From Lepidodermella squamata (lineage: Eukaryota > Animalia > Gastrotricha): DNA of 64,000 nt. Positions 1-63,265 of the stretch are shown here, piece after piece; the first letter of the stretch is position 1; every line of letters begins with the position of its first letter. The translations under genes and the position numbers were made by a program. The notes below the pieces were generated by a model. It was not told the origin of the DNA, did no database searches, and worked only from the letters and a program-made list of their open reading frames with translations. The stretch covers positions 4,340,001 through 4,404,000 of the forward strand of contig JBLDXI010000024.1 of assembly GCA_047495785.1 (NCBI GenBank). The letters are read 5' to 3'.

Positions 1-3000
1 AGACAGACGCCAGCGATGTTGTAGTAGCATTTGGAATATTCTTAAGGTTAGCTATTATATTGGTAAAACAATAATTGTAAAAATGGCGCCATAATAGATT
101 CAGTCTCACGAAGTTTTCTCCGTTGAATCAGCATTTTGATGGATTTAATAGACAGTGTTCCCCATTTTAAGGTCGCATTTGCGGGATTAGAGGACATTTT
201 GTTATTCAAGTTCGAGTCGAAGGCACAGTCGCTCGGGAACCACCAACCTCCGGTAAATGCGTATTGGGTGAAGCACCAATAAGCGGGGCCTTGATCAGAA
301 GTGGAAAACTGCTGATAATTGTGTTTACTTGACAGCATATCCCCAGCGTTGCCTGAGTAAGGGCCGACATATAGTCCATAACCATCGCCTTCGCTACTGA
401 CTTGAAAATCTCGGTAATATGCCCGCAGCTCTGTATTGTTCTGTAATACAACTCTGATTGCCAACTGATAGTCGCTATCTTTGGTCAGTTTGTACAAATT
501 CTCGTTACCTGCCATTTCATTTGATGGGAATGGAAATAGGTAAAGGAAAGTTCATACCAATCCAATAGTCTTTATTCAAGCCGAAAGGCGCAACGTTGAA
601 TCCATTTTTGTAATCTTGCCAGGTTCTGGCGAAAGATGTCGTATTGTAAATCTGTTGTTGGATCACCTATTGAACAAAAGCTTCAAACGTCCGCAAACCA
701 GTATAATAAAGCTCACCGTCCATCCAACATCTGCTGTCACGTAACTCAGCGGATCACATATCACCTGTAACGGTCCAACTTTTGGGTGGTAGATCCAATA
801 AACTGTATCTACGCTGTAAACTTTTGTGGCGTATATATCCATGCAATCTTGGGGTTTGGAGACAACTAAGGTACAGTTCGGTTAAACATCCAGAATTAGT
901 AATGTTCGCAAAATTACCAGGCTTTATCATCATAACACTAGAAGCTAGAGATATGTTTCTGCCTTTCCAAGAGTTCCAAAACAGCCCCATTTCCCACGAG
1001 TTGGCGCCGACCATTCCATTCATGTTAGCATCAGAACAGTCTGGATTAACTGGGTCTCCGTTGGTCGGATTTTTGAACCACCAACCCCCGGGTCGCTTTT
1101 GAGCGCAGGTGCGTCCTTTCGGCTGGTCGTAAGTCTGGAATGGTTGCTGGTTTGAGCTTACCAAGGATTCACCAGGGTGATCTGACATGGTTGCATTCAA
1201 AGTAGATATCGCCAATGTGTAGTTCACGTTGTCCAATATAGAAATTGACATATATGCCGCGGTTCGCCTGTCCCCAATCGTATCCTCCAAAACTACGGCA
1301 AGCATGTATTGAACACCCGTGACAGCTTTGTTCGTTAGCTGAAATATGATCGAATTGCCGATATAATGTGAGCCGTTCAGGCTTCCGAATCCAGTTTCGT
1401 AGGCTGCCCACGTTTTATTAAAGTCCAACCCATCGTTCTTGTTGCGCTGAATCACCGTCCAGCCGCCACCGAGGGCTACCATTTCGCAGAAAACAGAAAT
1501 TGCAGCTGCAGATCCAACCGGAGTTATTTGATATACACCGCTTGGGGCGTGAGGATTGCTCGCAAGAATGTCATTGCAATCCACCGGCTTTGGATAAACT
1601 TGCACTGTAATTGTAGCACATAATAAATCCATCTTTAAACTTCCGAAATTCGGAAACTGACTTGGCAACACATCGTGCGGTTTGTTCCTGCGAATCATCA
1701 TCTTGGTCGATCTCATGCCGAGATTAAACCCTTTGAACGTGTTGTAAATTGGCATTTCATTTGGAACTTCTGACCCGAATAAGCTAAGAGGAGGAGAATT
1801 TTACGAAATTCCGATAGAGATTTGTGGCTTACCCATTCAAGTTCGCCAAACTGGAATACCTGAAAAATGAAATCAATGAAATTGTAGAGCTCAACTTTTT
1901 TTATTGGTGAAAAGCCATGAGAAATGAGAACTGTCAAAGTACCAGTACAGTTGTTTAGTGCGAATAGTAATAATTGGAAATAATACGACTGTAAATTCTT
2001 ACCACCAGGCACCTTTAGAATTCTGTGCCGTTGCGATACTATTCCGATCATATGTGCTGAACTCAGCGTTCAGATTACTCAAAGAGTCACCTGAATAGGA
2101 AAATCAAATATAAAACCATGATCACTGATTAGAACAAAACCAACCTGCATTGCCCCCGTAAAAGGTGTTATAATTGATCTGATAGTTGTCAGTCTCGGTG
2201 CCGATGTAGAAATCCTTGTAGTAAGCTACGCCGCGACTATTGTCAGGTGCGGTCACATAGATACCAAGAATGTTCAAGCTGCTGTAGCTTCTTGTAGTCA
2301 TTTGCCAAATTTTGTCATTCCCAATCCAGAAATTCGAAAAGAAACTGCCGAATCCAATTTTATAATCATTCCAATTGCGGTAGAAATCTGTCGTGTTATC
2401 AATGCGCCTCTGGAACACTGTCCATCCCAAACTTTTCATGTCGCAATAAACGTTCATCGCAGGCATCGTTGGCGGATATATCTGGTAAAGTCCATCAGGT
2501 GAAGTCGGATCTCTCATTAGTATATCCTCGCAATCAGTCGGTGGCATTTTCCAGATATCTGTATTTTAACGCAGCATTTTAATTCAGCTTACATAGCTCG
2601 AAAACTAAAACCCGGGATCTAGGTACCCACCGCAATTCGAGCCGTAGCTGCTATTGTAGCCGATTGGGCACATGCAGGTTGACGCGCATAGACCCGTACC
2701 CGATGTGACGCAACCGGCGTGAGCTTGGCATCCCCTCACTTTGATTGTCATAGTGAAAGATGCGCTGGTATAATTTCTAGGTATAATTCGAAGTCCTGAT
2801 GTTCGAATATTGGGACACAACTTCGAAACGCCAGCTGCAGTACCGTTGTAGCCCGGAAATAACTAAGAAAAGATCACATTCACGTTATTCAGAGTATTCA
2901 GGCGATAAGTAACCTTCAATGGTGAAGATGAATTATCTTGATTAGTCAAAACCGGGTAGTAAAAGCTGCCGAGCCTTTGCTGCTTCACGTAGAATGAAAC

Positions 3001-3977
3001 AGCGTATGAAGTGACGTAAGCCGATGATAAAGTGCCTTTTCCAACTTCGATTGTCGATATAGTGACTTCAAAGGGTAGCGTAATTGACCAAAAGATTATA
3101 TCATCAACCGTCCATGGCCCCCAACCAGAAGTTGTAGTAGCTGCAGATGCGGTGCCCACCGAGGCATCTAACTTTCCACCGAGGGTAGAATAGATTGAAG
3201 TCAAGTCATCAGTGTCACATCCTATTTCAAGGCTGTAATTATCCAATCCGAAATTACGACGAATATAACCACTTACTGGGCGAAGCTATTCGAAGGCAAT
3301 TAAATGTATGTAATTTCAGAATAATTCAAACGGTTCGTACTTGTTTCGCAGTATCTTCCACCGAAACCCGCTAGACAGTTGCATTGGGTTGCTGAAATGC
3401 AAGTGCCGCCGTTGAAACACCACGGATAATCGAGACCGTTCGAAGAGCATATGCTTCCACCTTTAAATAAACGCTGAATATAACATTTCCCATCTTAGCA
3501 AGATACCTGTTGTTGAACAAGATGGCCCGGTATACGGAGAGACACAGTAACACAAGCCATTGGTACAAGTGCCACCATTTGAGCACTGTGTATTATCAGT
3601 GCAAACTGTATTTAAACGCGCATATTGAAATCCGTGCGATTATGTGAGCTTCCTCATTTACTTCTCGGAGTAGGCGTGTCGCAGATGGCTCCCATCCAAG
3701 TGGGCGCGCATGAGCACACGCTCGGGCTGCTACATGTCCCGCCATTTTGGCAAGGATTCGAGCAGACGGCTAATAACAAAAGCATTTACTATCAAATATC
3801 GATATATTTACTCGGCTTTGGATTACGAGTTGTGCAGTTAGACCCCGTCCATTGCCCAGTGCAAGAGCATGTGCTGCCTACGCAGGTCCCCCCGTTAGCG
3901 CAGCCACCAGAGCATTGGCTTGTGACACAAGGAATCCCTGCGACCAGTAATATCAAGTATTTGACAAGCAAGCCCAT
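1..3977 (-). CDS. Polycystin-1-like receptor, copy A (5' part only: signal peptide, 4 EGF, F5/8C, FReD1-3, start of Sushi-like linker); multi-exon, continues beyond window start
   Basis: ATG at 3977 (MGLLVKYLILLVAGIPCVTSQC). Phase-1 EGF exons, discoidin exon (2863-3246 ORF) and FReD motifs (DCEDI..VYCDM..GWTVFQRR, GGWWF, NLN) are collinear exon by exon with copies B and D. GT-AG introns are about 50 nt and I found no lesion in the visible part. Polycystin identity is inferred from paralogy, since the channel part lies outside the window. Confidence 0.8.
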
Positions 3978-4101
3978 ATGTAAAATTGAAATTTGGAATG
4001 TGGAGAATCAACTTGAAACCGTCTAACAAGCAACCAAGCTTCAAATTAGGTTTTACCTCAAATAAAAGAGTATAATATGTTTCGATCTTTTGTCTTGTGA
4101 A

Positions 4102-6861: not shown

Positions 6862-9800
6862 TCTGAGGTGGTTGAAACGTGTTCGTATTTTCAGACCGGA
6901 ATTTATTCGACCAACTCATTTGTGATTTTTAGGGGTTTTCTTTCCAGACCTCTCGAGGTGAGAGTGAGGTACCCCCGGTACTTCGGACATATATCTCTAC
7001 CTTCCATGAGTCTATGGGCGGTCAATGCTTTCAAATTCATCTTTCAAACAATCGAAAGCCGGGAAAGTAATTTTGACACTGACACAAAACTGCGCGAACT
7101 GAACGAACTGCGGCGCAACTACGTCAGCAATCGGCAATTTTCAGGGTAACAGCTGCAAAATTATGATTCAAATTAGACGACCGCAAGCTTTAATCAAGTT
7201 CGTCCGATGACAATTCAAATCATAAGGCATTCGTTTTTTGTTTCAAACAAGCCGTTATCGCCAACACAATACAAAAAAACGCAAGTCTCCTCATTCATAA
7301 TTGGGAGGGGAACGGATGTAATTGGGTGCAGCCGCCCTGCTTCTTCAGGTCGTACATCCCTCGAACAGATCTGACTGGTAGGCTGTCAGCCTGTTTTTTA
7401 CTTGGGAAAAGGATATCCAATTGCGAGGCAATTTTTCCCCCGTCTGGGAACAGCTTGGGGTCTTTGGTCTTCCTTGCAATGATGTAGGCTGCAGGGACCT
7501 GGCGCTGAGCAGGGTTCATCAATTTTCGCAGCCGTAATGCATGCAATTTCATGTCCATCCAGTGCATTAGCCAACGTTCGCGTTTAGCCGTCCGCTCGTA
7601 AGAGTTGTCTTCGATTCGTGACTCAACGAAATGCAAAAGACGATGGATTGAAAGTTCCACTAGGGTACAATTTAATAAAATGAGCAACACAAATTGGGCA
7701 GGAACCTACGTTTGGCTAGATTGCGTTCCCCAATTGGTTTGAAAACGGACGCAACAGTTCCCTTTTTCTCAAGAGCTTTTGTTACTATGGATGTCAGCTC
7801 TTCAGCCATGTAGCCCGCCAGTTCGTGATCCCAGTCGGTGTTTTCCTCAGCGTTCTCTGCAACTTGGCTGTACGTGACTGATATAATTGTCATGAAGACC
7901 TGAACAGCCAAAAACATGACGATCGTTGAGTAAGCCATGCAGAACAACATAATGAATCTCGAGTTGAAGCTCAACAACATCAAGGAACCAGTTACTCCGA
8001 TGATATTCTGAACCAGGGTCATAATCGAAGCAGTAAATGACTGAAACTCGTCGCAAGTCGTATTTAGGCTTAGGTAACCCAGTTGGGCGAACAAGACGGT
8101 TATAAGAGTGAATGCGAAGAGAAACGATGACAGATCGGCCTTGCCCTTGGATAGCGTTCCTAAGAAGATACACCAGTACTTGTTGAAGGTAAGATGGCGG
8201 AAAAATAGGAGCATGGTCATGAAGAATGTGATACCATAAAGATTCGCCATCAGAGCTTCCCAGTTGACTAGAAGATCAAAATTTACAAATGAAGTCTTGT
8301 CGGTCTGAAGCCGAGTAACAGCTTTCATCACAACGAGAATTCGAGCAATAAACAATCCAACGATGGCCAAGGCTATCAGTATCTGACACAGCTCTAACAA
8401 GTTCCAGCCATCTTTACGGAATCTTGTGAATCCTTCTTTCTTCATCTTGATTAAGATCTTGACCAGATGCGAGAAAACAAGCAGAATCCAAATTCCTTGA
8501 ATGGCGAAGATGAAGATTGAACTGGCGCCGATGTATTGATAGAGCTGAAGTGGATACATTCTTGCGTGATACGTCATTCCTCCAGCACTCAAGGCTTCGA
8601 AAACCACTTTCACTGCGATGAACAAGTTGACCTGAGCATTAAACAGGACCATGTCGACGAACAAGACTGAAGTGGCATTATCAAGCCATCTCCTTGACTG
8701 AAGCCCAGCGACGAAAGCTTGAGCTTTCGCGAGATTCACGGGCAGGTCGACGTAATATCCACCGCTGGTGTAGGTTGCCTGCCAGCCGGAGTAAGGAATT
8801 CCGCTGTCTTCTCGATGAATCCATGGAGCCTGATCAGTCGTTACGTTCTCTGGCACCCAAGCAGTGGTATCCACGTTGAAAGTCCAATTGAAATTAGAAA
8901 ACTGTCTGGTCTCGGTGTCCGCTCCGATTCCAAGTTGGCCAACGTATTGATTCTGGCACCTAATAGTATTGGCAACAAGAAGATCTCTGACTTTCATGAC
9001 AAACTGAGGAACCGGGGAAGTCTCTAAAAGGCAAGGGGCTGAAATTATACAACCCTTTCACATGAGTTTTCTAATGAAATGAAGCCGACTTACTAGAGCG
9101 GACTCGTTGTTGTCTCAAGCGAATAGGTCCGAGAACCACTACATCGTGATTAAGAACTTGATAGATATTTTTCGAATTGAATTTCAAGCCCTTGCTCAAC
9201 TGGTTGGCAGTGAAAAACTGCGGCAGAAGATTGCTATTCAGCCACGAATAAATTTGACTGTAGTCATTGATCACGCCCATCTGGGGTACATCACGCATCT
9301 CTACCAATGGCTTCAAGTCCCCGATTTGTTGATAGGCCAGTTTATTTCGCGTTCCGGAAATCACAATAGCAAAAGCCACGACGTAAAAGATGTGGTGGAA
9401 AATTCCGCCGAAGATGTTCCGCATCCGCTTGAAGAGCTCCGTCTTCTTGTTGGAGCTATTTTTCGAAAATTCCATCTTGCCAATGTCAAGGCCGTCATCA
9501 GGCAGAGACAGCAAAGTTGAACTGCAGACAGACAACAATGCGACTTTGACTGTTTGGATGAGAATGATGTCCTGGACAACACTCATGACCATTCCACTGA
9601 GCCACTGCAGCGATTTCTCCTTGCCCCACATCAAGCTGTACATGACAATGAAAAAGGAAGAGGCTCCAACACAGCCAGCGACAACTAGAATAAACTGCAT
9701 TTGACAATGGGCTGATATATGGAGATTTACTTACGAATCCATGCAATGATAGCGCAGTAGTATGGAAGCTGGAATGGCTTCTTATCTTTGCTGTCGACAT

Positions 9801-12319
9801 CTCTTCGCTTAAATCCCAGAGCCACGTTGAAAATGGTTGTGTATTGGCTATTCTCAGCCGATCGACGTCGAATTCGCTTGAAAATGAAGGCCATTATTGC
9901 AGTTGGAGGGATGACGATGACACATCCGATGAAGCTTGTGTAGACTGTAAACCACGACAGACGGAAGAATCCTCCAATATTGACGCCGACTCGGGGTGAT
10001 TTACTCTCTTTACCATAGAACATTGCGTTCACCAGCATGGCCATGAATAAGGCACTAACAACACAAGCCAGTCGTTCGCATCTGGTCCAGTTACTCGGAA
10101 GAGGACGTCTCGTGATGGACAACCACGGGTGAGAGCTGAACAAGCCAACTCGAGAATGAGCGCTGACCAAGTACTTGAAGCCTTTGATCTCATCTTCCGT
10201 CGCAAGCTCTTTGCACTTCATCTCTCCACTTTTCATGAGTGCCTTGATCAAGAAAACAAACTTCTGTCCCTTTTCGATATCGACCATCACAACTTTATCG
10301 ATCTGCATCTGAAGAGGCTTGCTGCCATGTGGCGCCCTGAATCGACTGTGAAGTCTAATTTCGATTGCCTCGATGTGACCAATCGGCAGAGTTGTAGTCA
10401 TCATGAAATTAGCTGGCCTTCTCCCGTCGAAACTCGATTCTCTCTCGCAATCGTCAAGGACTCGCCAGTTCGTATCACTGATATCACCATAAGCTCGTAG
10501 TAGAACCACAGGCTTCAGATGATAGTTTTTGACGCCGAAGTGATCGACGGAAACGAGGTATTTGCGCGTCTCGTACGGCTTGTTGCTCATGAGAGGCATG
10601 AATGCCCATTCTTTGATGTCCAGCTTGTCAAATCGCCAAACAACAATCACTCCGACGATGAAGAAAACAACTGCGGCAACTTGGAACGCAAGAACGAAAG
10701 CGTTATCTGATACAAGCGTGGCGAAATTGGCGAAAATATCGGAGAATTCAATAGTGCTGGGCGAGATCAAAAGATCTGCTCCGAAATCACCGAAATATGA
10801 CGATTTGAAAGTAACTGCGGATTCAGTCGAACTTGGATCGAGTTCGAAATCCTCATCAGTGCTTGTTTGTGAGTCGTCGTTTGCATCGCGCCTTCCCCTT
10901 GAATTTGTGTTTCGTACCTTGGCGAATCCTACCTTGAGATGGTATCCGTAGCATCGTTGTAGCTCGCAGGCATCTGATGGTAAGTCGTCCAGCGTCGAAA
11001 AGCTTGACAAATCTCTCTTTGTAAAGACTTGCAATTCGAAAGACCAATCTCCGCTTGATGAAAGATCCTGCATCTCAACGAAATTCTGCAATGCTGACTG
11101 CGGAATCATTATTCGCAGTTCGACATCTGTATTGTAGCTTGATTTGAGTTCTCCGAGGCTGGCATTCAAACTAGTGCTAACACTGGTTTGAGTAACAAAA
11201 ACAGACCAGGAATAGCTTTTGACTGTTGGGGTGCTGTTGAGAGATAGATACGCTGTGTAGCTGTACTTGATGACCGGGAATATCAGCACAAAATCTCCAT
11301 AGCCCGATGAAACAGGGAAGAGAGCCAACGATCCCAGAGTATCCGCGTTTGTACTGAGATCGCATGTAATCTTGCTCACATCACACTGGGAGTCATATTT
11401 CACAGCGCTAAGCATAGCTGCCTTGGAGACAACAGGCTTCCCAGTAATTTTTGCCGGATAGCCATTCTTGAGAACCAGATCTTTCTGTTGATAGAGAACT
11501 TTAACCGAAATGGTTGGCATGTTGAATGGCTGTTTTGGGTCGAGGACGTTAACGACGTAAGCTGTTAACACTACGGTGAGAGTGTCGGTTTCTTTTATCG
11601 TTGTTCCCGAGGCCTTGGAATCGATCAATTCCGCCGCTGATGTCGCATTGGGAAACAACACAGCTGCGTGAATTGTCTCTAGCTTCAAATTTGGCAGCAT
11701 CTTTGCATCTATTTCACTCAGAAGTATTGAAAAGAATTTCCCACTAAATGTGAAGTTTTTGCCCGTTTTCCCATTGTCCTCGACCATTTTTAGCATGCTC
11801 TCAATGATTTGATTGAAATTTTGGTAAAGCTTGGATGACTGCAAAATAAAATTTGTAGGCTTTTCTAGTTGAAGCTTACAAAGTTCGATAACCTCATCAG
11901 TTGATAGTGCAGCTTCAGAGTTTGTCCCGGCTGAATCCAGATTGCATTTGGTGTTTTTATCATCATAATTAAGTGATAGCGGTTTTGTTTCCTCCGTGGT
12001 AGTGATCGTTTCAGACACTGCGAACAGGACTGAGCTAGCCGCCGTAGCGTAAGCAACTGAAATATTTGCTAGAACCTCCGGCGACATCTGACTCGCTAGC
12101 TCAGCATATTTCGCCATTACTGGGGCCAAGTCTGCGATGAAAGCTGCTGACGACACAGCTACAGCAGTTGTACTGTCAGTCGAGCTGATGCGTATATTGA
12201 AGCTTCAACAGCAGCGGCACTGATTGGAATGGCTGCTTCTATTAACGTCTGGTCAGGCATTGACATGATAAAAGAGATCGAAATGATGGATGCCGGAACT
12301 TTTTCGCTCCTCTTTTGCG

Positions 12320-14470
12320 AGCAATCTTTGCCGGTCCAACTTCCGGTACAGGTGCAAATGTTTGGCTGCGCACAAATTCCGCCATTTTTACAATCACCAA
12401 TTGCGGAGCAGGATGCTTAATTGCATTATATAGGTTCTGAAGCATATTTCAAGACTCTTGAGCTTACGATATGCGCAGTTTGTATGACTCCAACCCGATG
12501 CACAGCTGCACACATTGGTGCCAACGCAGGTTCCCCCATTATAGCAAGATCCCAAGCCCGAACAGTCAACATTATTCCACAACTGGCATCTACTCCCACT
12601 CCATTTGCTTGGGCAAGAGCAGATGTCAGGCGCGAAGCAAGTTCCGCCGTTTAGACAGCCGCCGATTGATGAACAATCAGCTATATTTAATTATGTTCGT
12701 TCTGAACAGCTTGGAAAAAGTGCCCACTCACGTTGTGTACAGTTCGCGCCCACCCAGCCTGCTGTACACGCGCAGGAATTTGGACCCACACAAGTTCCTC
12801 CGTTCAAGCATCCTCCTAAAGGGGCGCAATCGGCTGTGAACACTTCAATTATCATGCATTCTCTCCAGGATAGCAATTCTACCTATCTCGCAAATAGAAC
12901 CTCCCCAGCCTAAGTTACACGCGCAGGTATCCGGCGCCACACACGAGCCACCATTTTGACAGACTGGCGAGCAAACAGCTACATGAACTTATGTAAATAA
13001 TGTTCCGTTTGGAAATTCGTGCATTATTACCTGTGCTGCAATCAGTCCCAGTCCAACCTGCTGGGCAAGAGCAAATGTCTGGAGCTGAGCAAGATGCGCC
13101 ATTTGTACAAGCAGGAGAACAGATAGCTTCGAAAATAATTGGGAAATTTAATGCAAAGGGGTAAATCTAGGCTTTAGCTTTATCTATACCGGTTGAACAG
13201 TTGGAACCAATCCAGCCCACCGTGCAGGTGCAAATGTCAGGGCTGGAGCACGTGCCGCCATTTAAACAGTTGCCAACAGAAGTGCAGCTCGCTGAAAAAG
13301 GAGGAAATTCTGGTCAGAAGGGGTACAGAGGCGATACAACGCCTACGCATGTCACATGTGGGGCCTTCCCAGCCTTGATCGCAGCTGCATTCATCCGGAG
13401 CTGAACAAACCCCGTTGGCACAGGCCTGATTGCAGATAGCTGAAAACAGCGGTTAAAATGGCTACACCTATCGGATTTGACCTACGAGTGTCACACGTCG
13501 CATCAGTCCAACCAGCAGCGCAAATGCATGTGGTGGAAGGCGTCATGCAAGTCCCTCCATTCAAGCAAGGCAAGCATGTGACTGGTGAAAGACATGAGAT
13601 ATAACTTATCTTTCAATTAATTCAATTAATTATTATTTTTCAACCGGAAGTGCAATTTGATCCCGCCCATCCTGGAGCACATGTACAGGTGTTTAGGGCA
13701 GTGCAAGTTCCTCCATTAGCGCAGTTGCCCAGTGCTGAGCAGTCAGCTGGAATTACACTACCTAGAAAAAAGCAGTCATTGAATTAGTTTTCTTGCTGCT
13801 CGTCTTGTCTGGATTAATTTTCAATATTGAATTGGTACGGGATGCATAAATACCTATGTCGCACGCAGAACCTTCCCAGCCCGGTGCGCATGTACAGGTG
13901 TTTGGCGCAGTGCACGTTCCTCCATTAGCGCAACCGCCCAGTGTCGAGCAGTCAACTAAAAATGCAATTGAAAGGAGTCAGAAAACGTCGTGAGTCGTGA
14001 GATGAATTATTCATGATGAATATTGCAATATCGGATCGTTACTAAATAAACAATAACGCACCTGTGTCGCACGTGGAACCTTTCCAGCCGGGTGCACATG
14101 TACAGTTGTTCGGGGCGATGCATGTTCCACCATTTGAACAAAGCCCATTTGCAGCGGAGCAACTTGCTGGAACAACAAGCAGTAATTACAGAAACTTAAA
14201 TTCACGATTTATCTCACGAGTGCTGCAATCTGCTCCTCGCCATCCAGCTGCGCACGTGCAGGAGTTAGGACCGATACATGTCGCTCCATTCTTGCAATCA
14301 CCAATACCCGTACATGAGGCTAAATAGTATTTAAACGTATAGCTGTTTTGGTTGAAATTAAAAACGCACGAGTAGAACAATCAAGCCCCGACCAACCAGC
14401 ATTGCACGAGCAGTTGTTGGTTCGAATGCAAGCTCCATTTGAGTTACAGTTGGATAACGATGAACAATCT
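12320..14470 (-). repeat. Array of about 14 EGF-like modules of copy B, mostly one phase-1 exon each
   Basis: Recurrent C-x-x-IGGC-x-NGGTC-x-x-PN-x-C-x-C-x-x-GW-x-G-x-x-C units about 150-160 nt apart, separated by short introns. Confidence 0.8.
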
Positions 14471-16142
14471 GCTGTTGCAGCTGTTAACCAAAAAATAGAA
14501 TAGGAATATAATCGACCTATCTCCTCATTCTATGTCTCGATCTTAAAACCCTCTGACCTCTCGGATTGTCGGCTTTACCCGTTTTGGCCAATATTCAACT
14601 AAGGAAATTCTCGTACCCAGGGGGCGATCCAGAGTCCAAAGAACATCATGCTGTTTTCCCCTACAATTTTCCCCAAAATTGCTGTTTTCTCCATATTCAA
14701 TGAAAAAACGAGCGAAGCGAGGAATTTTTTTAACTTAAACACGTTTAAAACCTGTCGATAGGTTAGTAGTTAATAACTCACGAATGCATGTGCCCATAAT
14801 TCCAACCCACTGTTTAGACACAGCACACGTCAAAGTTGCGTAGGGAAGTCCGGTATCATTGAAAACATAACCAGGAGGGCTGCATCGATATTCCCAGACA
14901 ATTCCTCTGGTATTTCGCAACTCGGGCGCGACTGCTATTGGAATAGTGAAATTGTTGGTGGTGTTCGCGACTAATGGCGGATCAACACATCGCGTTGAGA
15001 CGCAGCTGTGCGTTGCGCCAGTCGGAGAGCTATACGGAGGTGCGCACGTCTTTGTTAGATCTCCAGATGCCAACTCGAAGTTCTGATCACATTCGTAAAC
15101 TATGGTATAGGTGCCAGCATTGTTTGTAACCGAAGCGATATGCGAGTTTGACCCATTGGTATCAGGCAAGGAGCCGCATAGCTCGCGACAGTCAATGGGG
15201 GTGCCTGTCCAGCGTCCTGCGGTCTGATTGCAAGTCAGCACAGACCAGTCTTGGGCACTCAGCATATTTCGGTAGTCATTTATGCACGTGTAATTCACAG
15301 ACATGATCGTCGGCATCCCAACTATTTCCATTTGGGTGTTTGGCATCCCAGGGGGAGGCCCGCAGACTGACACATGGCTTAGAAGCTCGTTACGGTAGTA
15401 TGTATCCGTCGCTGTACTGACAGCTCCATCGCCGGGTTTGCAAATCAGGCTTCGCAAACTGCAAGAATTGGCAGTTTGGCTGTAAACAAATAGAACGCAC
15501 ACAAAGGTCGTATAGCTCGTACATGTAGCCATGCATTGCTCAGGGGTAGATATGTCTCCCAAAGTATATGATGTTCCTGAATTGCTGCATTGGTATTTTG
15601 GGGCCTTGATAAATGTGCCCTTCGGAACAACGCGGCGAATCTTCATCTCAGTGCGTGCTAGAGGATCTGTGGGTGATACTGAAGAGAACGTGCTCCAGTA
15701 AGTATGCATAGAACTAGAAGCCTGAGGTCCATACAGGTTGTTCAAATTGCTTCGAGTCGAAAGTGCGCTACAAGTGGGCAGAAACAACCACCAACCACCG
15801 GAAGTACACGCATCCAATACAAACGGCCGACCGTTATGGTAATTGAGAGAATCTCCAATTTTCGAATTGTTGTTATATCCGGAGATAGTCAAGACGTTTG
15901 ACGTCCCAGTGAGGTAAAAGGTACTGTATAACGCGTATCCCCAAGTGTTCGCCATGCCGATTTGAATTAGTAGCTCGTAGTCTCCAGCCTGTGTCAGGGC
16001 TCTGATTTTTGCGCTACCAAGCCAATAGCTGGCTGATGGATCACCAAATCCAGCTTCATAAGCACTCAAGTTTTGTGCAAAACTTTGATTTCCATCAAGC
16101 CGACGTTGGATAACTGTCCAGCCACCGCCCATTGTATCCTGA

Positions 16143-19100
16143 CCCAGTCGGAAATCAGTAGACCGAGAAATAGCGGAATGATCGAATTGAGATCGAATAA
16201 AGATCTATCAACTATGATCGTAGAAATTTGGTCACAGCTAGACCGAGGCGACCATTCAAGCAGCCCGAATCGTTTAAATTGCGACTATACCAATAGATCG
16301 AGGCTCCTCGATCGCCGCTGGGTCAGATTTCGTTCAGATCCAGACAAGTCACCCGCATTATTCAACACATTTAATTACTCACCGCCGGTTTAGCCACTTG
16401 GAGCAGGCCAGGGTTATTTTAATAGGATCCTACCAAATCGATCTAGCTAGGGTCGATCCAAAGGCAACGATACTTTAATTTAACCAAAAACTAAGCTACG
16501 CTATGGGTTATCACATTCACGGGCTTAGATCTAAGGCGATAGATCTACAAATGATCTGCGGCAATATTTAGGTTATAAATTGTCTTCCTCGATTCGTAAT
16601 GGGTTTGAGCCCAACACGTGTCGTTATGACGCAACATTGTTACAGCAGCGGCTTTTTGAACTACTGTGAGAATGAAATAAATCGGTCATTTTGCCATTCT
16701 TCAACCTACTGTAACGTTGTCTTATTTCGGACAAAAACCTGTTTTTCAGGCTTAATTTTGTGAGATGAACGAATTTTTTTACGTACTTTGCGCCAAAAGA
16801 TGCACCTTGAAAAACTGCATATCGTAGTGTTAATCACGGTAGAAATATACCTTCTGCAAATTATACCTGCACAGGTATTCACGGAAAACTGACTCGGCTA
16901 ATTTCGGACACAACTGGGGTAATTTCGGACAGCTCAGTGTGAATATTTAGATTAGGGCCAAAGTTCGCATTAAAGCGAGATAAAATTTGTGAGCAGATTT
17001 AAAAATAAAAAAATGAATTGCATGCTGAGGGATTTGAACCCCCGCTAGCGAATTGGCGCTCTCAACGCAGCTCAGTCCTATTCTCACTAAAATAGTAAAG
17101 TTTAAAAACGGTCAAGGTTGATTGAATTCTCTGTAGTTAGGGGCTGTCCGAAATTAGCCGGGGGGTATCGGTTTTTCCGACGGAATTTCAGGCAAAATGT
17201 CTCGTATAAATTTGTTCCAAACATGCCAGCCTAACTGAAGTCGATGCGCTCTTTCTTTTGCGCTTCTATCCGGCAAAAAATATTGTCATTTGAAAAAGTT
17301 TGCAATTTTTTACCTCGGCGCTCACCTGCCAAGAATTACAGCCATTCTTCGTGAACAAATCCGTTTGTCATGTTTCAGGTGTCATTTGAAAGACAAGACT
17401 CCGGGCTATCTCCTGCATTTTGAACGGTATTTCTATTTACCGGGGTTTTGGAGAAACTCGCGCTCAAAGCCAAAAGTGTCCGAAATTACCCTGTCCGAAA
17501 AAGGACTGCGTTACAGTAATTCGCACTTGAGATTTTTCATCATAATTTTAGTTTATTTTTGTTGAGGCTGAATTGCTTTTTGTACTGCTATGCTAAGGGC
17601 TAAGGCTATGCTGCTACCTTAACACTCTTAGTTGATAGCCTTAGTAAATTTGTTATGATTATTTAGCCTTTTATTTAGTTTTTTTATTTTAGCGCAACCA
17701 CATAGATTCTAGTTTTCGAACCCCAATTTAAACGACTGGGCTAAATGGACATCTGCCATACATTTTTCAAAATTTTTAGAATTTTATAAATTTCCATGCC
17801 GATCTCGCGGGCGAGAAATTCGAAATTGCAATTATCGCGGCCTTCCTGCGTGGAAATTCGGCCGTAGTACAGGCTTGAAATGTCCGTCTATTTTTTCTGA
17901 TTTTTGTTATTAATTATTTTAACTTAAATCGTTAAAATCGTTAAACGTCAACCATTCTCGCCCGTCACCTTAATTTTTTGCTTCAGGTTGAACATCGCGT
18001 ACTATGGCAGTCGTGATTTATTATGACTTCGATTGTTATTTGTTTCGAAAATTCCACCTTAATTATTGACCACTTATAGATAGATTCCTGTCGAACCTGT
18101 CTCACAGAGCTGACTGGTCATCCAGTTAAACAAGATTGTGTGAAAATCAACAACTCCTGCGGTAAGAAATTTTCCTGCCTGTAAAATGTAGGTGAAAAAT
18201 TGGTGAAATTGCAACAAAATTATTAGAAATAATTTGTCAAGTCAACCTGTAATGCTCTCGTAGAATTTTCTGAGGCCTAGGATTGTTTACTATTGATACG
18301 AAAATGTTGGCTATTCAATTTAGATGAATAACGCATTTTCGAAGCAAAAATCGAATTTTAATCAATAATTATTTTTAATTTCCTAATTTTTTGTTTTCAG
18401 AGATGCTATGTGATCAGGACGAAAATTTGGAAACCAAAACAATTATCGAGCGATTGTGGCTACAAACTGCGGCTATCGGCTGGTAAGCAAAACACATTTT
18501 CTGAAATTATCATGTAATTATTTCGCCTGAAGCTTTGGCAATTTTCCCCGAATTCTCAATGAATCGTTCGTCGAATTCAACCACCGTGAAATCGTTTGGG
18601 TAAGAAAAATGAATTTCAAACTAATTTCGTTTTCTGGTCTCAGCAATAATAAACAAATTCAAGTTGTATTGAATTTTCTAGATGCAAAAGCTATGGTTCG
18701 AAATTTGGGACGAATTTCAACCCGAATCTCGATCGAAGTGAAAATGGCAAGTCAATTTTGCGGCTATTTTTTATTTATTTTTGAGAAAAATGTTTAGGTT
18801 CACCGTGCCAAGATAACGTGCTCGATTTCCTTGTCGCCGAGTCATTCGAGCTCCAATTTCAGGTAAGACCCAGTGATTATTGCGAAAAATGTTATTCTCA
18901 CCTTAAATTTATTTTCGCAGATATAAAAGTTTCAATATTTTCGCTGGACTGAAGTGGCGAGTAACGAGTGACGACGACAAGGCGAACTCGAGGCGGCTAC
19001 GACTTCATTTCTGGAAAATTGAATCGACGTTCAAGCCGAGAGACATTTATTTATATTCATGTGATTTGTGTCCAATTGCTTCATCGTGCTAGTACGACGA

Positions 19101-19434
19101 ATAGAATGTGGCAAAACTTATTTTTAAATAAATAAATGGAAAAAATTGGAATAATTGCTTTTAATGAGAGTAAATGAACCAAGTGAAGGAACAGCTGGAG
19201 CAAGCCGTGATTCATGCGGGCAGTTCAAGCCCGTATTATGAACTAGATCTACGCACGATCTAATCGCGAAAATTTAGATCTACCGCCGGTCTATCCATCA
19301 GGACCTATCCGCCGTCTAGGTAGTCGCTAGCTAGATCTACCCCAGTGTCATTTTTCGCATCCCACACGATCTATCCAGATAGATCCAATATTAGCGGTTT
19401 GGGTCTAGCTAGGATCTATTTTTTTACGACTGGG
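16143..19434. mobile_element. Non-autonomous CACTA/EnSpm (CMC)-like DNA transposon inserted in the FReD4 exon of copy B
   Basis: Termini CCCAGTCG...CGACTGGG, 2-bp TSD GA (16141-16142, 19435-19436), dense (A/G)GATCTA/TAGATC subterminal repeats at both ends. Removing the element and one TSD restores GCG TAT TGC GAT CAG GAT ACA ATG (AYCDQDTM), matching copy D AYCDQETM. Confidence 0.85.
16709..17516. mobile_element. Nested MITE with TA target duplication (Tc1/mariner-pogo type), about 0.8 kb
   Basis: Imperfect about 25-bp TIRs (left CTGTAACGTTGTCTTATTTCGGACA, right TGTCCGAAAAAGGACTGCGTTACAG), TA at 16707-16708 and 17517-17518, internal AATTTCGGACA repeats in both orientations. Confidence 0.75.
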
Positions 19435-29970: not shown

Positions 29971-29974
29971 TTGG

Positions 29975-43995: not shown

Positions 43996-44347
43996 AAGCC
44001 ATCTGAATTCAATCGCTCGATTGTCAAAATGGGCGGTGCGTATCGATGGCGTTTGGGCAGGAAAATGCATCATGAAAAATGCATATACCAATGTTATAAA
44101 TTGTCTTGCTTCTATTTTGCTCCTTAAGATGGTTTTTTCAGGCGAATGCAAGCGGAAAAAACGAGCTGAATATTTATGATATATATCATGAATATGTATT
44201 ACTTCATTAATAAACACAATGAATTGCTATATGAATAGCAGAAGCTAGAAAGTTCGAGACGTCGAGGAAAATCGAGAAAATACAATCCCTGAACTTCTAT
44301 CAAATTTCGGCCGAATTTTTATAATATAGGTGAATTTCACACTGTTC

Positions 44348-57276
<12,929 letters not shown>

Positions 57277-58696: not shown

Positions 58697-58858
58697 AAGA
58701 TCTTGATTAACCTGGATATGACAATATATAACGAGTAAAAGAATCCAGCTTTGCGTGGCTTCGCGTGGCCAGTTTCGAAATTGCGAAACACACTCGATTA
58801 TAATGTTCATGTTTTTCACTATGAATAATTTTACTTTGATTTCGACACTTTTCTGCAG

Positions 58859-60350
58859 GAGTGCGATCCAGCTGTTCTACTGATAGCAATTGCCCCAACG
58901 GAGGCAAATGCTTGAATGGGCTATGCCATTGCGCCGAGCCATGGGGTGGGATATTCTGCGCAAGCAGTGGTTTGTAATACAACAAAATTTCGTCTCAATC
59001 CCAACCAAATATATGTCACAGGTGGGACATTTTGCAAACCCGCGGGTGCCCAATATCCCCGATGCCTAAACGGAGGAACGTGTCCGGCGGCTAGTAGTTC
59101 GGCAACTGTATGCACTTGTGCTAATTCTTACACAGGGCGTTTCTGCGAGTTTTGTTAGCTCAGCGCTTTACCGCGCCCAAATTATATTTCTCATAATATG
59201 ACTCAAAACTATACATGACTATTGCAAAAACTATCAAACTATACATGACTGTCAGTTACATGACTATTGCAGAATAGCTATTCTGCAATATACCATAGCT
59301 TACCTAAAAAATGTTGCTAATGCTACAACTGTTGTTTACTCGGTTGACCTCGGCTTGGCAAGGTACGAATGTGAAAAAAGTGTTACTCGGTCGGTAGCGA
59401 AGAAAGAGTGCTATCTTCTGCCTTCGGAGTATACTCTGGGGATTCATTTTCGTGCAGTCGTAAGTTGAACAGCTATGTGAGCCTTACGTAAGCCTTTGTA
59501 ATCATACAGCTCGGCCATTGCCATACGACTGCAGTACAATCCGGGAGTACAACTCAGCGATGGGATTTCCTAGTGAATCTGGCGTATTCACAAAAGCGTT
59601 TCTAAAGCTCTTGAGAAGAATGACCCAGCTGAAACAATTTTCAAACCTGTTGGAGAACGAAATCTAGCAAAATGTAAGCTCTGCTTACTGGTTTTTTTTA
59701 TCTATAACGTTTTATTTCCTCTAGTGGAGTTTTCAATTCATCGCTTCTCGCGCCTCGTTGAGTCGCGAATCGAGGACGATGCTTACGAGCGAGTTGCGAA
59801 ACGCGAGCGTTGCCTGATGCATTGGATGGACATGAAATTGCATGCTTTACGGCTACGTAGACGGATGAACCCTGTTCAGCGTCAGGTGCCTGCAGCCATC
59901 AACACGTCAACGAAGGTCAAGCTGTTCCAGCATGGGGACAAGTTTATCACACAACGAGGTCATTTCGTTAAGAATGTCGAACATCCGCGACTATCTGAAC
60001 CAGTGCCTCATTCGATCCCTCAGGATTGCCAAATGCAGCCTGCGTTCAATGCCTATGCGCCAGTATTGCCGAAGCAAATGATTTTGCCTCAAATCGTCAA
60101 ACAAAACGCCTCAATTCCTGATTTCATGTTCAAGGACAAGGCCACGAAAAACGAAACCCCAGTCGGAAAACAACCACAAAAAGGACCGTCAGTTCAACCA
60201 CAGGTCTCTCCGAGCCAGAAATCGCTGTGGGGTATGCTTTTCCCGAAAAAATAGCAGCCCGGTAGCCTGCCAGTCGGATCCGTTCGTGGAATGTACGATT
60301 CGAAGAAACACGGCGGAAGTAGTCATTTGCATCCCTATCCGACACATTAA
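58859..60350 (+). pseudogene. Copy E: internally deleted polycystin pseudogene
   Basis: Two EGF exons similar to copy F, then the Sushi-like linker exon (59299-59459, 1-nt frameshift), then the FReD4 start RPLPYDCSTIREYNSAMGFPSESGVF fused out of frame to post-S6 VSKALEK...FKPVGERNLAK. The last exon has an in-frame TAG (60252-60254) followed by the conserved tail to 60350. Confidence 0.85.
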
Positions 60351-61538: not shown

Positions 61539-62710
61539 TTTTAAGTTATAACTAGGCAAACAGTGAAACACGTTGAGAAAATTCTGCCTATGTCGGCGGA
61601 ATCACCCATAAATAGATATGTATTGCGTTCGGGCAAACAACAAGACTGATACGTAGGCGAATGATAATGATAAAAGATTCTTGTACGCTCGCAGCAATGG
61701 AAAGCCATTAATGAAGACATGCCGCCAGTTAATCATATTATACTGATGCTCTCTATAGGTGAACGAAGGCTTTTCTTATATCTACTGTATTATTATGCAC
61801 GCTTTTCTAAAGATTACATTTATTATGCATTATAGCTGCGCACCTGTTCGTTCGAAAAAAATGTCTCAGACAAAGACAGCAGAGTTTGATCATTCGATCA
61901 CACGGACAAAATCGATCACTTTATTATAGCGTAGTTCATGTAAAATTGGCTCAGTATTCGGTCGGGCTATCGAAATTCGGTCAAGCGGACTGAAGTATTA
62001 TACATAAAATGCGATATAGCTGTTCTTACTTCTATCGGAACAGTTATACTTCACTCGATTCTAACTGCTGAACTATCAATAATTTAGTTAACACTTCCTT
62101 GCGCATCAAGGCGTCGAATAACGCTGTTTAGTAGCGATGAATATGCTAGAAAACCGGACACTAGTATGTCGATTTGCAAAACCTTGTGATCAGTTGCCTT
62201 TTTGAAACAAAAACGATTTGGGCTTTACCATTGTGTAATGTTCACAGAAAAGAAAACACTTTGAATAGTGTCGAACGAACGAAAATTACGCTACCAGCAA
62301 CAGACAATGCGAACGCCAACGCTCGACAGCATTAAATGTAACGGGCATATCAAATGAAGCCCTGTACGAAAGCAGCCAAGTAATGCGCGCTTCGATGCCG
62401 CCAATGAATTGATAATATGTTGTTTAAGATTATGAGGGATTTGGAAATTACACAACTTTCAGGTGATCAATTATGCATGCGGTTAAACAATGGCAACTAA
62501 AAAGCTGCTACCGGATCGGGAGAGTTACATTTAGAGAGACGCAGTAATGCAAAATTCATGATAGAACAATTGATGGCCAGGATAAGGGGATGATTCGAGA
62601 CGTTTGTGTGAAGGGGCGTAGGCTGGGAATTTCTAATAAATTGGTGAGAGAAATTGTTTCTAGTTTTAACTCTGCCGGTTTTTTTTCAAAACAACGAAAC
62701 ATATTCGAGA

Positions 62711-63265
62711 ATGTATATCCTATGTGTAATTTTAATACTACTCACCGTTGTAATTCAAGGTTTTTTTGGTAAAAATAAGCCGACTTTGATAAATTTTTTG
62801 TTTGCAGGAGCCTGGTGTATTACTTATTGTAATTCTATTGGGGATTGCGAAAATGGGGGAACCTGTTCGAAGGGGCTATGCTATTGCCCCGTGCCGTGGG
62901 GAGGCCATCGCTGCGAAAATAATAGTTGGTGACCGCTCTAGTCTCACAAGCAATTTGATAAGTGATAAATATACATCGTACAGACGGGAGATATTGTAAG
63001 GAGTCCGGCACCAACTATCCCGCGTGTAAAAACGGTGGATCCTGCATAAACGATGACCTTGGAGCATCATGCCTTTGCCCTCCTTTATTTACTGGGCGTT
63101 TTTGCGAGTTATGTAAGCTCAGCACGCTTACGCAAGTTGCTCATTATTACTTACTACTCATTATCACAGATAATTGTTCAACACCCTGCCAGAACAATGG
63201 TACTTGCACTGCTCAGTTAACTTGCAACTGCACAGCAGGATGGACTGGGTCAACATGCGCATCAG
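62711..63265 (+). CDS. Copy F, first exons (signal peptide + 3 EGF); remainder beyond the window or interrupted
   Basis: MYILCVILILLTVVIQ|GAWCITYCNSIGDCENGGTC..., NYPACKNGGSC...GRFCE (homologous to the DYPWC.NGGTC...GRYC exon of A, B, D), then DNCSTPCQNNGTC. Shares upstream motifs with the other copies. Confidence 0.65.

What the first reader, a model, noticed from the sequence alone, without database searches (positions are those of the whole stretch)
1..63265. Tandem family of giant polycystin-1-like channels with a four-FReD, discoidin, PAN, Sushi, EGF ectodomain
Seen: at least seven copies or remnants of one gene in 64 kb, with C and D apparently intact. B, C and D show the whole architecture, joining EGF-F5/8C-FReDx4-PAN-Sushix3-EGFn to an 11-TM PKD1-type membrane region with no room for a REJ domain. 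Known: PKD1-family ectodomains use LRR, WSC, C-type lectin, PKD, SUEL and REJ modules. FReDs are the ligand-binding modules of ficolins, tachylectin-5 and FREPs. PKD1-type subunits form channels with a PKD2-type partner. I do not know of a polycystin built from tandem FReDs. Inference: this is a lineage-specific repertoire of lectin-like receptors coupled directly to a cation channel and evolving by birth and death, possibly for glycan, microbe, substrate or gamete sensing.
Basis: partly seen in the sequence, partly recalled or inferred. Interest (0 to 1): 0.92.

Follow-up and report, generated by a model that had tools for sequence, protein, structure and literature searches.

The report
Polycystin-like receptors carrying four fibrinogen domains
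This small-intron animal genome holds a tandem cluster of very large genes that join a lectin-like outer part (four fibrinogen-related domains, a discoidin domain, Sushi and EGF modules) to a polycystin-1-type 11-helix membrane channel subunit, a combination I found in no database sample or paper, although the polycystin-1 family is known to swap its outer modules.

Summary
The window carries four large copies of one gene: A (cut by the window start), B, C and D. It also carries a collapsed relic (E) and an EGF fragment (F).

A hand-curated model of D is one open frame of 3763 aa. It has 30 exons and 29 GT-AG introns of 45-108 nt. C is also open from ATG to TGA. B is colinear, but about 3.3 kb of non-coding DNA breaks its FReD4 exon.

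The architecture is: signal peptide, EGFs, discoidin, four FReDs, a PAN-like module (weak), three Sushi, about 13 EGFs, GAIN, TM1, PLAT, TM2-6, TOP domain, TM7-11. Pfam misses GAIN and PLAT; a predicted structure shows both. There is no REJ domain, and the GPS cleavage motif is lost.

One exon joins FReD4 to the Sushi and EGF modules, and one exon joins EGFs to GAIN, so this is one gene. No RNA run was available to confirm it.

The paralogs are old (synonymous sites saturated) and under purifying selection. The channel clade is known otherwise only from metagenome contigs. None of 181 database relatives carries a FReD, and no paper describes one.

The scan had already found this family at another locus of the same genome (s1-374167).

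Verdict: a new variant of a known kind; function is inferred.

The parts
1..3977 (-). Copy A, 5' part only: signal peptide (MGLLVKYLILLVAGIPCVTSQ), EGFs, discoidin, FReD1-3. It runs off the window start.
   Evidence: Pfam Fibrinogen_C; tblastn with D; FReD HMM gives 3 domains; gene model
7298..24645 (-). Copy B: full module order, colinear with D (54% identity over 3648 columns), but its FReD4 exon is interrupted.
16142..19426 (.). About 3.3 kb of non-coding insert inside B's FReD4 coding exon. The coding reads ...SAYCDPQS then stop on one side and resumes [10 protein letters not shown] on the other. TIR-like arms lie at 16224-16244 and 19402-19422. I found no in-frame GT-AG way round it.
30350..41724 (-). 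Copy C, apparently intact: ATG (MQYLIFALLLSLNSIDSA), 1 EGF, discoidin, FReD x4, PAN-like, Sushi x3, EGFs, GAIN, 11 TM, TGA stop. About 20 exons, introns 48-70 nt.
44348..57276 (+). Copy D, intact curated gene: 30 exons, 29 GT-AG introns of 45-108 nt, 3763-aa open frame.
   Evidence: DNA confirmed by unitigs
44348..45208 (+). D: signal peptide ([19 protein letters not shown], split by a 47-nt intron at 44403-44449) and five EGF-like modules.
45317..45901 (+). D: discoidin (F5/8 type C) domain plus a short Cys-rich piece.
   Evidence: Pfam weak; paralogue profile against PDB discoidin domains, E 2.6e-5
45955..48354 (+). D: FReD1 (aa 384-592), FReD2 (610-828), FReD3 (836-1030).
   Evidence: Pfam; FReD HMM; PDB best hits ANGPTL6, tachylectin-5A, ficolins at 1e-22 to 3e-27
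48634..50130 (+). D exon 18: FReD4 (aa 1125-1315), PAN-like module, three Sushi and the first EGF, all in one exon.
50191..52403 (+). D: EGF stalk (about 13 EGFs, mostly 102-nt phase-1 exons). Exon 26 (51448-52403) carries the last EGFs and the helical start of GAIN in one exon.
52458..53522 (+). D: GAIN-like beta domain. It includes a degenerate GPS ([12 protein letters not shown] at about 53478-53513) and a basic loop (KRKRRD).
   Evidence: AF2 model pLDDT 76; VIA-align Z 9.4-10.7 to CD97, Gpr126, CELSR1 and BAI3 GAIN domains; alignment
53589..54552 (+). D: TM1, PLAT domain (about 53676-54086), TM2, TM3.
   Evidence: BLASTP to lamprey PKD1L2, E 2e-25; PLAT fold Z 14.6, rmsd 1.7 A; Foldseek 2e-7
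54601..56573 (+). D: TM4-6, TOP/polycystin domain, TM7-11 with pore helix. The filter position reads I-G-V where PKD2 has L-G-D.
   Evidence: Pfam; PDB polycystin-2 3e-43, PKD1L3 6e-29, PC1 2e-11; hydropathy
56627..57276 (+). D: cytoplasmic tail. The first ~45 aa are conserved in B, C and E.
58835..60347 (+). Relic E: only an EGF piece, the post-FReD3 linker, the last bases of the channel exon with its intron, and the tail. The order is right but everything between is deleted.
62962..63279 (+). Fragment F: one EGF-like ORF of the type that precedes the discoidin domain. It is either a remnant or the start of the next copy.

Best explanation
Each full copy is one gene for a type-I, 11-helix polycystin-1-like (PKD1L-type, TRPP-related) receptor and channel subunit. 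Its usual outer modules (LRR, WSC, C-type lectin, PKD repeats, REJ) have been replaced by a lectin-like head on a stalk. The head is discoidin plus four distinct FReDs plus PAN-like plus three Sushi. The stalk is about 13 EGFs. It joins a non-cleaving GAIN domain, then TM1-PLAT-TM2-5, then a PKD2-like six-helix channel module with a TOP domain.

Shown here: the architecture, the single open frame, the folds, the age of the copies and purifying selection on them.

Inferred: (a) the protein pairs with a PKD2-like subunit, as PKD1-family proteins do; (b) the head binds an extracellular, probably glycan-bearing, ligand or surface; (c) binding or the resulting pull is passed through the EGF stalk, GAIN and TOP to the channel complex, most likely in ciliated sensory cells, as for the nearest named relatives (planarian pkd1L-2 with pkd2L-1).

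The cluster grew by old tandem duplications and loses copies: B is broken by an insertion and E is collapsed.

My odds: one gene per copy about 0.85-0.9; PKD1-family membership about 0.95; a ligand- or contact-sensing role about 0.45.
For: One gene: D is a 3763-aa open frame through 29 GT-AG introns of 45-108 nt, and a constrained gene finder recovers it independently. C is open from ATG to TGA. Exon 18 holds FReD4+PAN+Sushi+EGF and exon 26 holds EGFs+GAIN-A. Between them lie only 102-nt EGF exons with 51-63-nt introns, which leaves no room for a terminator or promoter. Only the N-terminus has a signal peptide. Order and the four FReD types are conserved in A-D although pS is 0.68-0.85.

PKD1 type: Pfam Polycystin_dom and PKD_channel. 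Stalk-TM1-PLAT-TM2-3 aligns to lamprey PKD1L2 at 2e-25. PLAT fold Z 14.6 and GAIN fold Z about 10; PC1 chain 8z6b_A Z 9.2 at 24% identity.

Selection: pN 0.12-0.16 in the channel and 0.29-0.34 in the ectodomain for D/B; FReD dN/dS 0.17-0.24 for A/B.

FReDs are genuine: PDB hits to ANGPTL6, tachylectin-5A, ficolins and FIBCD1 at 1e-22 to 3e-27.

Functional analogy: pkd1L-2, pkd2L-1 and pkd2-4 RNAi reduce vibration and flow sensing in planarians (PMC11448475). Schmidtea PKD1L-2, Owenia and Lingula are the nearest named relatives.
Against: There is no transcript evidence: the only run found holds the unspliced DNA. No ligand is known. The canonical FReD Ca2+ loop (D-x-D-x-D) is degenerate in all four FReD types and shortened in FReD4, so acetyl-sugar binding of the ficolin kind cannot be assumed. 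The filter Asp of PKD2 (L-G-D) is Val here (I-G-V, conserved in the clade), so the contribution to ion selectivity is unclear. The GPS cleavage motif is lost, so the tethered-agonist route proposed for PC1 may not apply. No PKD2-like gene lies in the window. The nearest named relatives are only about 25% identical, so transfer of function is weak.
Confidence: 0.6

Rival explanations
1. Two adjacent genes per unit: a secreted FReD-PAN-Sushi-EGF lectin (a type common in molluscs and cnidarians) sits just upstream of a short-ectodomain PKD1-like gene, and the long frame is an artefact of modelling.
For: FReD+PAN+Sushi proteins of 300-450 aa exist as free-standing clusters. There is no RNA evidence. 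My gene finder will always try to bridge stops with introns.
Against: The EGF-to-GAIN and FReD4-to-EGF joins each lie inside single exons. The seven exons between them are in-phase 102-nt EGF exons with 51-63-nt introns. There is no stop, no second signal peptide and no intergenic space. The arrangement is kept in B, C and D despite saturated synonymous divergence. The metagenome relative L005 also has EGF repeats running straight into GAIN, and L001 has a Sushi-bearing exon 47 nt upstream of its GAIN-channel ORF.
Confidence: 0.07
2. One gene, but mainly a mechanosensory or adhesion tether rather than a ligand-gated sensor. The FReD, discoidin and EGF part anchors the cilium or cell surface to matrix or cuticle, and force on the stalk is what the PKD1L/PKD2L complex senses.
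For: The nearest named relative with a phenotype, planarian pkd1L-2, acts in flow and vibration sensing. Long EGF stalks, discoidin and FReD (tenascin, angiopoietin-like) modules are typical matrix binders. GAIN domains are mechanical modules in adhesion GPCRs. The Ca2+/sugar site of the FReDs is degenerate.
Against: Several old, diverged paralogues with faster-evolving heads (pN about twice that of the channel) fit diversified recognition better than one structural tether. GPS cleavage, which is used in force sensing by adhesion GPCRs, is lost.
Confidence: 0.25
3. Gamete-recognition receptors of the REJ/PKDREJ kind: sperm-surface PKD1-like proteins whose lectin-like head binds egg-coat glycans and triggers ion fluxes.
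For: Sea-urchin REJ proteins and PKDREJ are PKD1-family members with lectin modules (established knowledge). Hemichordate and abalone 'receptor for egg jelly-like' proteins are among the channel-domain hits. The heads evolve faster than the channel.
Against: There is no REJ domain. The window clade is separate from the REJ-like clades in the tree. FReD dN/dS of 0.17-0.24 shows no sign of the positive selection usual for gamete recognition.
Confidence: 0.08

Closest known systems
Polycystin-1-like proteins of the PKD1L2 / invertebrate PKD1L type (e.g. Schmidtea mediterranea PKD1L-2, Lingula anatina and Owenia fusiformis PKD1L2-like)
   Same: GAIN-like domain, then TM1, PLAT, TM2-5, then TM6-TOP-TM7-11 with PKD_channel. 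The stalk sequence (PPNTIxF) after the GPS position is shared. Several of these relatives, like the window genes, lack the C-x-C-HL/T cleavage motif. Lingula paralogues show the same habit of swapping outer modules: C-type lectin, Sushi, CUB, NIDO/VWD, EGF.
   Different: Only about 25% identity in the channel part. The window genes, with a few metagenome ORFs, form a separate, fully supported clade. None of the 181 relatives retrieved has a FReD or discoidin domain. PLAT is too diverged for Pfam. Size is 3500-3800 aa.
Polycystin-1 (PKD1) and PKDREJ / sea-urchin REJ proteins
   Same: 11-TM PKD1-family topology with PLAT and a GAIN/GPS region; lectin-type modules in the ectodomain; expected pairing with a PKD2-type subunit.
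   Different: No REJ domain, PKD repeats, LRR or WSC. The GPS autoproteolysis motif is lost. The channel module is far closer in sequence to PKD2 (3e-43) than to PC1 (2e-11).
Ficolins, tachylectin-5A, FIBCD1, angiopoietin-like proteins and mollusc FREPs (FReD recognition proteins)
   Same: Complete FReD fold signatures (GGWTV, GGWW, NLNG, P-domain cysteines), with E 1e-22 to 3e-27 against solved FReDs. The FReD+PAN+Sushi module combination also exists in mollusc secreted proteins.
   Different: Those proteins are secreted or single-pass and oligomerise through collagen or coiled coils. Here four different FReDs sit in tandem in one chain that is covalently part of an 11-TM channel subunit. The Ca2+-site motif is degenerate.
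Adhesion GPCRs (GAIN-domain receptors)
   Same: A long adhesive, module-rich ectodomain ending in a GAIN domain directly before the first TM helix.
   Different: 11-TM PKD1-type membrane part with PLAT and a TRP-like channel module, not a 7-TM; no GPS cleavage motif.

Membership tests
Polycystin-1-like (PKD1 / 11-TM TRPP-related) family | Eleven TM helices: TM1-5 followed by a six-helix TRP-like channel module | tested here: met
   Hydropathy on curated D shows peaks at aa 2588, 2796, 2831-2859, 2903, 2940, 2999, 3230, 3280, 3325, 3367, (pore 3408) and 3468. Same pattern in B and C ORFs.
Polycystin-1-like (PKD1 / 11-TM TRPP-related) family | PLAT domain in the loop after TM1 | tested here: met
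   Pfam finds none even at E<=1. BLASTP aligns the loop to the PLAT of lamprey PKD1L2. The AF2 model matches lipoxygenase and lipase PLAT domains at Z 14.6, rmsd 1.7 A and Foldseek 2e-7.
Polycystin-1-like (PKD1 / 11-TM TRPP-related) family | TOP/polycystin domain between TM6 and TM7, and PKD_channel | tested here: met
   Pfam PF20519 (to 5e-29) and PF08016 (to 4e-25) in B, C and D.
Polycystin-1-like (PKD1 / 11-TM TRPP-related) family | GAIN domain immediately before TM1 | tested here: met
   Model residues 2-355 match GAIN domains of CD97, Gpr126, CELSR1, BAI3, GPR110 and GPR56 at Z 7.3-10.7. This rests on a predicted structure of pLDDT 76.
Polycystin-1-like (PKD1 / 11-TM TRPP-related) family | GPS autoproteolysis motif (C-x-C-x-HL/T) | tested here: not met
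   B, C and D read [11 protein letters not shown]: both cysteines and H-L-T are replaced. The same loss is seen in the metagenome relatives and in Owenia, Lingula and Schmidtea PKD1L2-type proteins. No Pfam GPS hit.
Polycystin-1-like (PKD1 / 11-TM TRPP-related) family | REJ domain | tested here: not met
   No Pfam REJ hit at E<=1. The ~525 aa between the last EGF and TM1 are taken up by the GAIN-like domain. REJ is also absent from several annotated PKD1L2-type relatives, so it does not define the wider family.
Polycystin-1-like (PKD1 / 11-TM TRPP-related) family | Assembly with a PKD2-type subunit | not testable with these tools
   No PKD2-like gene in the window; needs co-expression.
Fibrinogen-related domain (FReD) proteins | Complete Fibrinogen_C domain | tested here: met
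   Pfam hits cover profile positions 2-221. Four domains per gene by HMM. PDB hits at 1e-22 to 3e-27.
Fibrinogen-related domain (FReD) proteins | Ca2+ site (D-x-D-x-D loop) next to the ligand pocket, as in ficolins and tachylectin-5A | tested here: not met
   The alignment of 15 FReDs shows only the first Asp is usually kept, and the loop is shortened in FReD4 (also the alignment). The motif definition comes from my knowledge of the family.
Sushi/CCP, discoidin (F5/8C), PAN/apple modules | Recognisable domain signatures | tested here: inconclusive
   Sushi x3 is met. Discoidin is met by the profile search although Pfam scores are below the cut-off. PAN has only sub-threshold Pfam hits (17.8 and 11.4 bits against 21.4) and a six-Cys pattern. 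The AF2 model of this part failed (pLDDT 38).

The most novel reading that the evidence does not exclude
A polycystin-type channel complex that is gated or tuned directly by an extracellular lectin array. The four non-equivalent FReDs plus discoidin would read glycan patterns on microbes, food, substrate or conspecifics and turn recognition straight into a cation signal. The paralogue array would then be a family of pattern-recognition ion-channel receptors (possibly working with the MACPF gene embedded in the array), for which no ligand-to-polycystin coupling of this kind has been described.
Probability: 0.18. Interest if true: 0.8.

Novelty: new variant of a known kind. Interest (0 to 1): 0.55.

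Why it matters
What activates polycystin-1-family proteins is a long-standing open question. Here the outer part is built from modules whose relatives are tractable lectins or matrix binders (FReD, discoidin), and it is attached by a simple EGF stalk and a non-cleaving GAIN domain to a channel module that is unusually PKD2-like. That gives a natural construct for testing whether ectodomain binding controls a polycystin complex. It also shows how far ectodomain shuffling has gone in this family, and it documents a divergent PKD1-like clade known otherwise only from unannotated metagenome contigs. If it is merely another shuffled PKD1L paralogue used in sensory cilia, it is a modest addition to a known pattern.

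Tried and rejected
It is therefore DNA. Laying it only confirmed the assembly.

2. Pfam on the 700-800-aa middle ORFs gave nothing. Homology and the predicted fold resolved them.

3. My first two gene-finder runs mis-modelled several places: a read-through at D's EGF4, a missed FReD3 exon, a false 284-nt intron in C's discoidin and a false 233-nt last intron. I corrected these by eye and with a constrained rerun.

4. I first thought D had a frameshifted signal peptide. A 47-nt GT-AG intron restores the frame, and the DNA run confirms the A5 run there.

5. Looking for FReDs upstream in relatives: the contigs of P0001, P0153, P0002 and P0003 end too soon or show other modules. A search with L001's upstream exon found nothing.

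6. L001's 230-aa module looked ConA/LamG-like by eye, but neither Pfam nor PDB search supports that.

7. AF2 of the PAN-Sushi part with 3 sequences failed (pLDDT 38).

8. In-frame splicing around B's insert: none found.

9. In the tree, the long branch of win_B comes from a frame error of mine in one B piece, not from biology.

10. Papers: five searches for a polycystin+FReD architecture found nothing relevant (one search was read).

Full report
WHAT IS THERE

The window is animal DNA with very short introns. ORFs of 150-825 aa lie in same-strand chains. Pfam finds Fibrinogen_C, Polycystin_dom and PKD_channel in these chains with strong E-values, and EGF, Sushi, F5/8C and PAN more weakly.

Self-comparison at DNA and protein level defines the following units:
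- A (minus strand, about 3977 down to the window start; 5' part only)
- B (minus, about 24645..7298)
- C (minus, 41724..30350)
- D (plus, 44348..57276)
- relic E (plus, 58835-60347)
- EGF fragment F (plus, 62962-63279)

A Sushi+MACPF gene (plus, 26657-29494) lies between B and C.

GENE MODELS

ORF breaks coincide with GTAAGT...YAG introns of about 50 nt. A home-made Viterbi gene finder gave full-length chains but made local errors. I corrected those by eye against the paralogues.

The curated D gene has 30 exons and 29 GT-AG introns of 45-108 nt. It is one open frame of 3763 aa from ATG 44348 to the stop at 57274-57276. A rerun of the finder, with introns limited to 40-130 nt and splice matrices trained on D, recovers the same D model apart from one optional in-frame 54-nt intron. 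It also gives C as 20 exons and 3474 aa ending at TGA.

D's signal peptide ([19 protein letters not shown]) is joined to EGF1 across a 47-nt intron.

Unitigs of a public DNA run match 44200-50100 with no differences, so the sequence, including the A5 run near the start, is not an assembly slip.

B is colinear with D (54% identity over 3648 columns), but its FReD4 coding exon is split. The coding reads ...FSAYCDPQS followed by a stop at about 19427 and resumes [10 protein letters not shown] at 16141. Between lie about 3.3 kb without ORFs, flanked by imperfect inverted repeats, and I found no in-frame splice around them. A further ~1 kb sits in the intron before B's FReD1 exon. B is therefore probably disabled, and recently so, since all its other exons are open.

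E keeps only an EGF piece, the post-FReD3 linker, the last bases of the channel exon with its intron, and the tail.

ARCHITECTURE (D numbering)

| Module | Residues (aa) | Evidence |
|---|---|---|
| Signal peptide | 1-19 | |
| Five EGFs | up to ~195 | |
| Discoidin | ~196-375 | paralogue profile hits CASPR2, neuropilin and factor VIII discoidin domains, best E 2.6e-5 |
| FReD1 | 384-592 | |
| FReD2 | 610-828 |; hits ANGPTL6, tachylectin-5A, tenascin, ficolins and FIBCD1 at 1e-22 to 3e-27 |
| FReD3 | 836-1030 | |
| FReD4 | 1125-1315 | |
| PAN-like six-Cys module | ~1330-1400 | sub-threshold only |
| Three Sushi | ~1417-1600 | |
| About 13 EGFs | to 2063 | |
| GAIN-like domain | ~2064-2565 | |
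| TM1 | 2588 | |
| PLAT | ~2617-2753 | |
| TM2-6 | | |
| TOP domain | ~3020-3230 | |
| TM7-11 with pore helix | | |
| Tail | ~280 aa | |

Pfam sees no PLAT, GPS or REJ. However, residues 349-655 of the 698-aa exon align to stalk-TM1-PLAT-TM2-3 of lamprey PKD1L2 (E 2e-25).

An AlphaFold2 model built on a 24-sequence alignment (pLDDT 76) matches:
- PLAT domains, at Foldseek 2e-7 and VIA-align Z 14.6 with rmsd 1.7 A
- adhesion-GPCR GAIN domains, at Z 7.3-10.7
- polycystin-1 chain 8z6b_A, at Z 9.2 with 24% identity

The GPS motif C-x-C-x-HL/T reads [11 protein letters not shown] in B, C and D. A basic loop (KRKRRD, SRGRRD, SRRRRS) lies just upstream.

The channel module is closer to polycystin-2 (3e-43) and PKD1L3 (6e-29) than to polycystin-1 (2e-11). 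Its filter position is I-G-V where PKD2 has L-G-D.

ONE GENE OR TWO

No RNA run was offered, so the argument is structural.
- FReD4, PAN-like, Sushi x3 and the first EGF share exon 18.
- The last EGFs and the helical start of GAIN share exon 26.
- The seven exons between them are in-phase EGF exons separated by 51-63-nt introns.
- There is one signal peptide, at the N-terminus.
- The same order, with four orthologous FReD types, is kept in paralogues whose synonymous sites are saturated.

I put 'one gene' at about 0.85-0.9.

EVOLUTION

For D/B and D/C, pS is 0.68-0.85, so the duplications are old. pN is 0.12-0.16 in the membrane part and 0.29-0.34 in the head. For the younger pair A/B, FReD dN/dS is 0.17-0.24. 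Both parts are therefore under purifying selection, and the head changes about twice as fast.

RELATIVES

An exhaustive HMMER search of 1.84 billion cluster representatives with C's channel ORF found 2816 relatives. Only three are above 40% identity, and all three are unnamed ORFs from ENA metagenome assemblies. The next best is 32%.

In a tree of 92 sequences, the window copies and the metagenome ORFs form a clade with 100% support, apart from all other PKD1-like representatives. The nearest named proteins are spiralian: Owenia, Schmidtea PKD1L-2 and Lingula PKD1L2.

None of the 155 proteins fetched by that point has a FReD by a local HMM. None of the 26 Lingula-type relatives carries PF00147. 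Instead they show C-type lectin, Sushi, CUB, MAM, NIDO/VWD, LDLa and SUEL modules.

The metagenome contigs give the following:
- L005 has EGF repeats running into GAIN.
- L001 has a Sushi, an EGF, an unidentified ~230-aa module, a Ser/Thr-rich stalk and another Sushi, 47 nt upstream of its GAIN-channel ORF.
- L003 has neither EGF nor FReD in 2.3 kb upstream.
- All these contigs are too short to exclude FReDs further out.

Two scans of JGI metagenome contigs were blank. Five paper searches found no polycystin with FReDs (one search was read).

HOW IT PROBABLY WORKS

By family rules, this is a PKD1-like subunit that joins PKD2-like subunits. The head is a chain of modules whose relatives bind glycans, matrix or cell surfaces. 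Its signal, or a pull on it, would reach the channel through the EGF stalk, an uncleaved GAIN domain and the TOP domain.

The only functional data near this clade are from planarians. There, pkd1L-2, pkd2L-1 and pkd2-4 are needed for vibration and flow sensing in ciliated neurons, and other pkd genes mark chemosensory cells (PMC11448475).

Ligand identity, gating and tissue are all inference. The degenerate FReD Ca2+ loop and the Val at the filter position are cautions.

COMPARISON AND NOVELTY

The genes pass the tests for the PKD1-like family that I could run: 11 TM, PLAT, TOP, PKD_channel and GAIN. They lack REJ and the GPS cleavage motif, as some annotated PKD1L2-type proteins also do.

The FReD-discoidin head on this chassis is new to me, to the database samples I could search and to the searchable literature. 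Swapping of outer modules is, however, a known habit of the family. I therefore rate it a new variant of a known kind.

An earlier follow-up in this scan reached the same reading for another copy 125 kb beyond this window (s1-374167). The array thus extends well beyond these 64 kb, as the notes also indicate.

LIMITS

- There is no transcript evidence.
- A full domain-architecture query of public databases was not possible.
- The PAN assignment is weak.
- The C, B and A models are machine-made apart from spot checks.
- The organism is coded, and I did not identify it.

Noticed in passing
window 26657-29494 (+): A separate two-exon-like gene between copies B and C. It has a signal peptide, a Thr-rich stretch and a Sushi (26657-27466), then a MACPF/perforin domain (27788-29494; Pfam 5e-11).
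   Followed up: partly
window 53390-53540 (D); same place in B and C: The GPS autoproteolysis motif is replaced ([12 protein letters not shown]: no Cys pair, no HL/T). A conserved basic loop (KRKRRD, SRGRRD, SRRRRS; furin-like) lies about 30 residues upstream in a low-confidence loop of the GAIN model. The same loss is seen in the metagenome relatives and in Owenia, Lingula and Schmidtea PKD1L2-type proteins.
   Followed up: partly
window 16142-19426 and 22241-23297: Two insertions specific to copy B. One is ~3.3 kb inside the FReD4 exon, with TIR-like arms (16224-16244 / 19402-19422) and an inner 27-nt inverted-repeat pair (16707-16733 / 17492-17518) that looks like a nested MITE. The other is ~1 kb in the intron before FReD1. 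Neither has an ORF of note.
   Followed up: partly
window 44403-44449: A 47-nt intron splits the signal-peptide coding region of D. Without it the signal peptide looks frameshifted. A, B and C have the signal peptide and first EGF in one exon.
   Followed up: yes
window 50191-51549: The EGF stalk is encoded one EGF per 102-nt phase-1 exon with 51-63-nt introns. This layout makes gain and loss of EGFs easy: D has about 13 and C fewer. C also has 1 N-terminal EGF where D has 5.
   Followed up: partly
L001 1-1398 and L003 1-2300 (ENA metagenome contigs): The closest relatives of the GAIN-channel part (42-47% identity) carry other upstream modules. L001 has Sushi, EGF, an unidentified ~230-aa module, a long Ser/Thr-rich (mucin-like) stalk and Sushi. 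L003 has neither EGF nor FReD within 2.3 kb. In L001 the 1632-aa GAIN-channel ORF has no intron at all.
   Followed up: partly
window 56250-56330 (pore loop of D); alignment A6: The selectivity-filter position aligned to L-G-D of polycystin-2 reads I-G-V, and this is conserved across the window copies and the metagenome relatives.
   Followed up: partly
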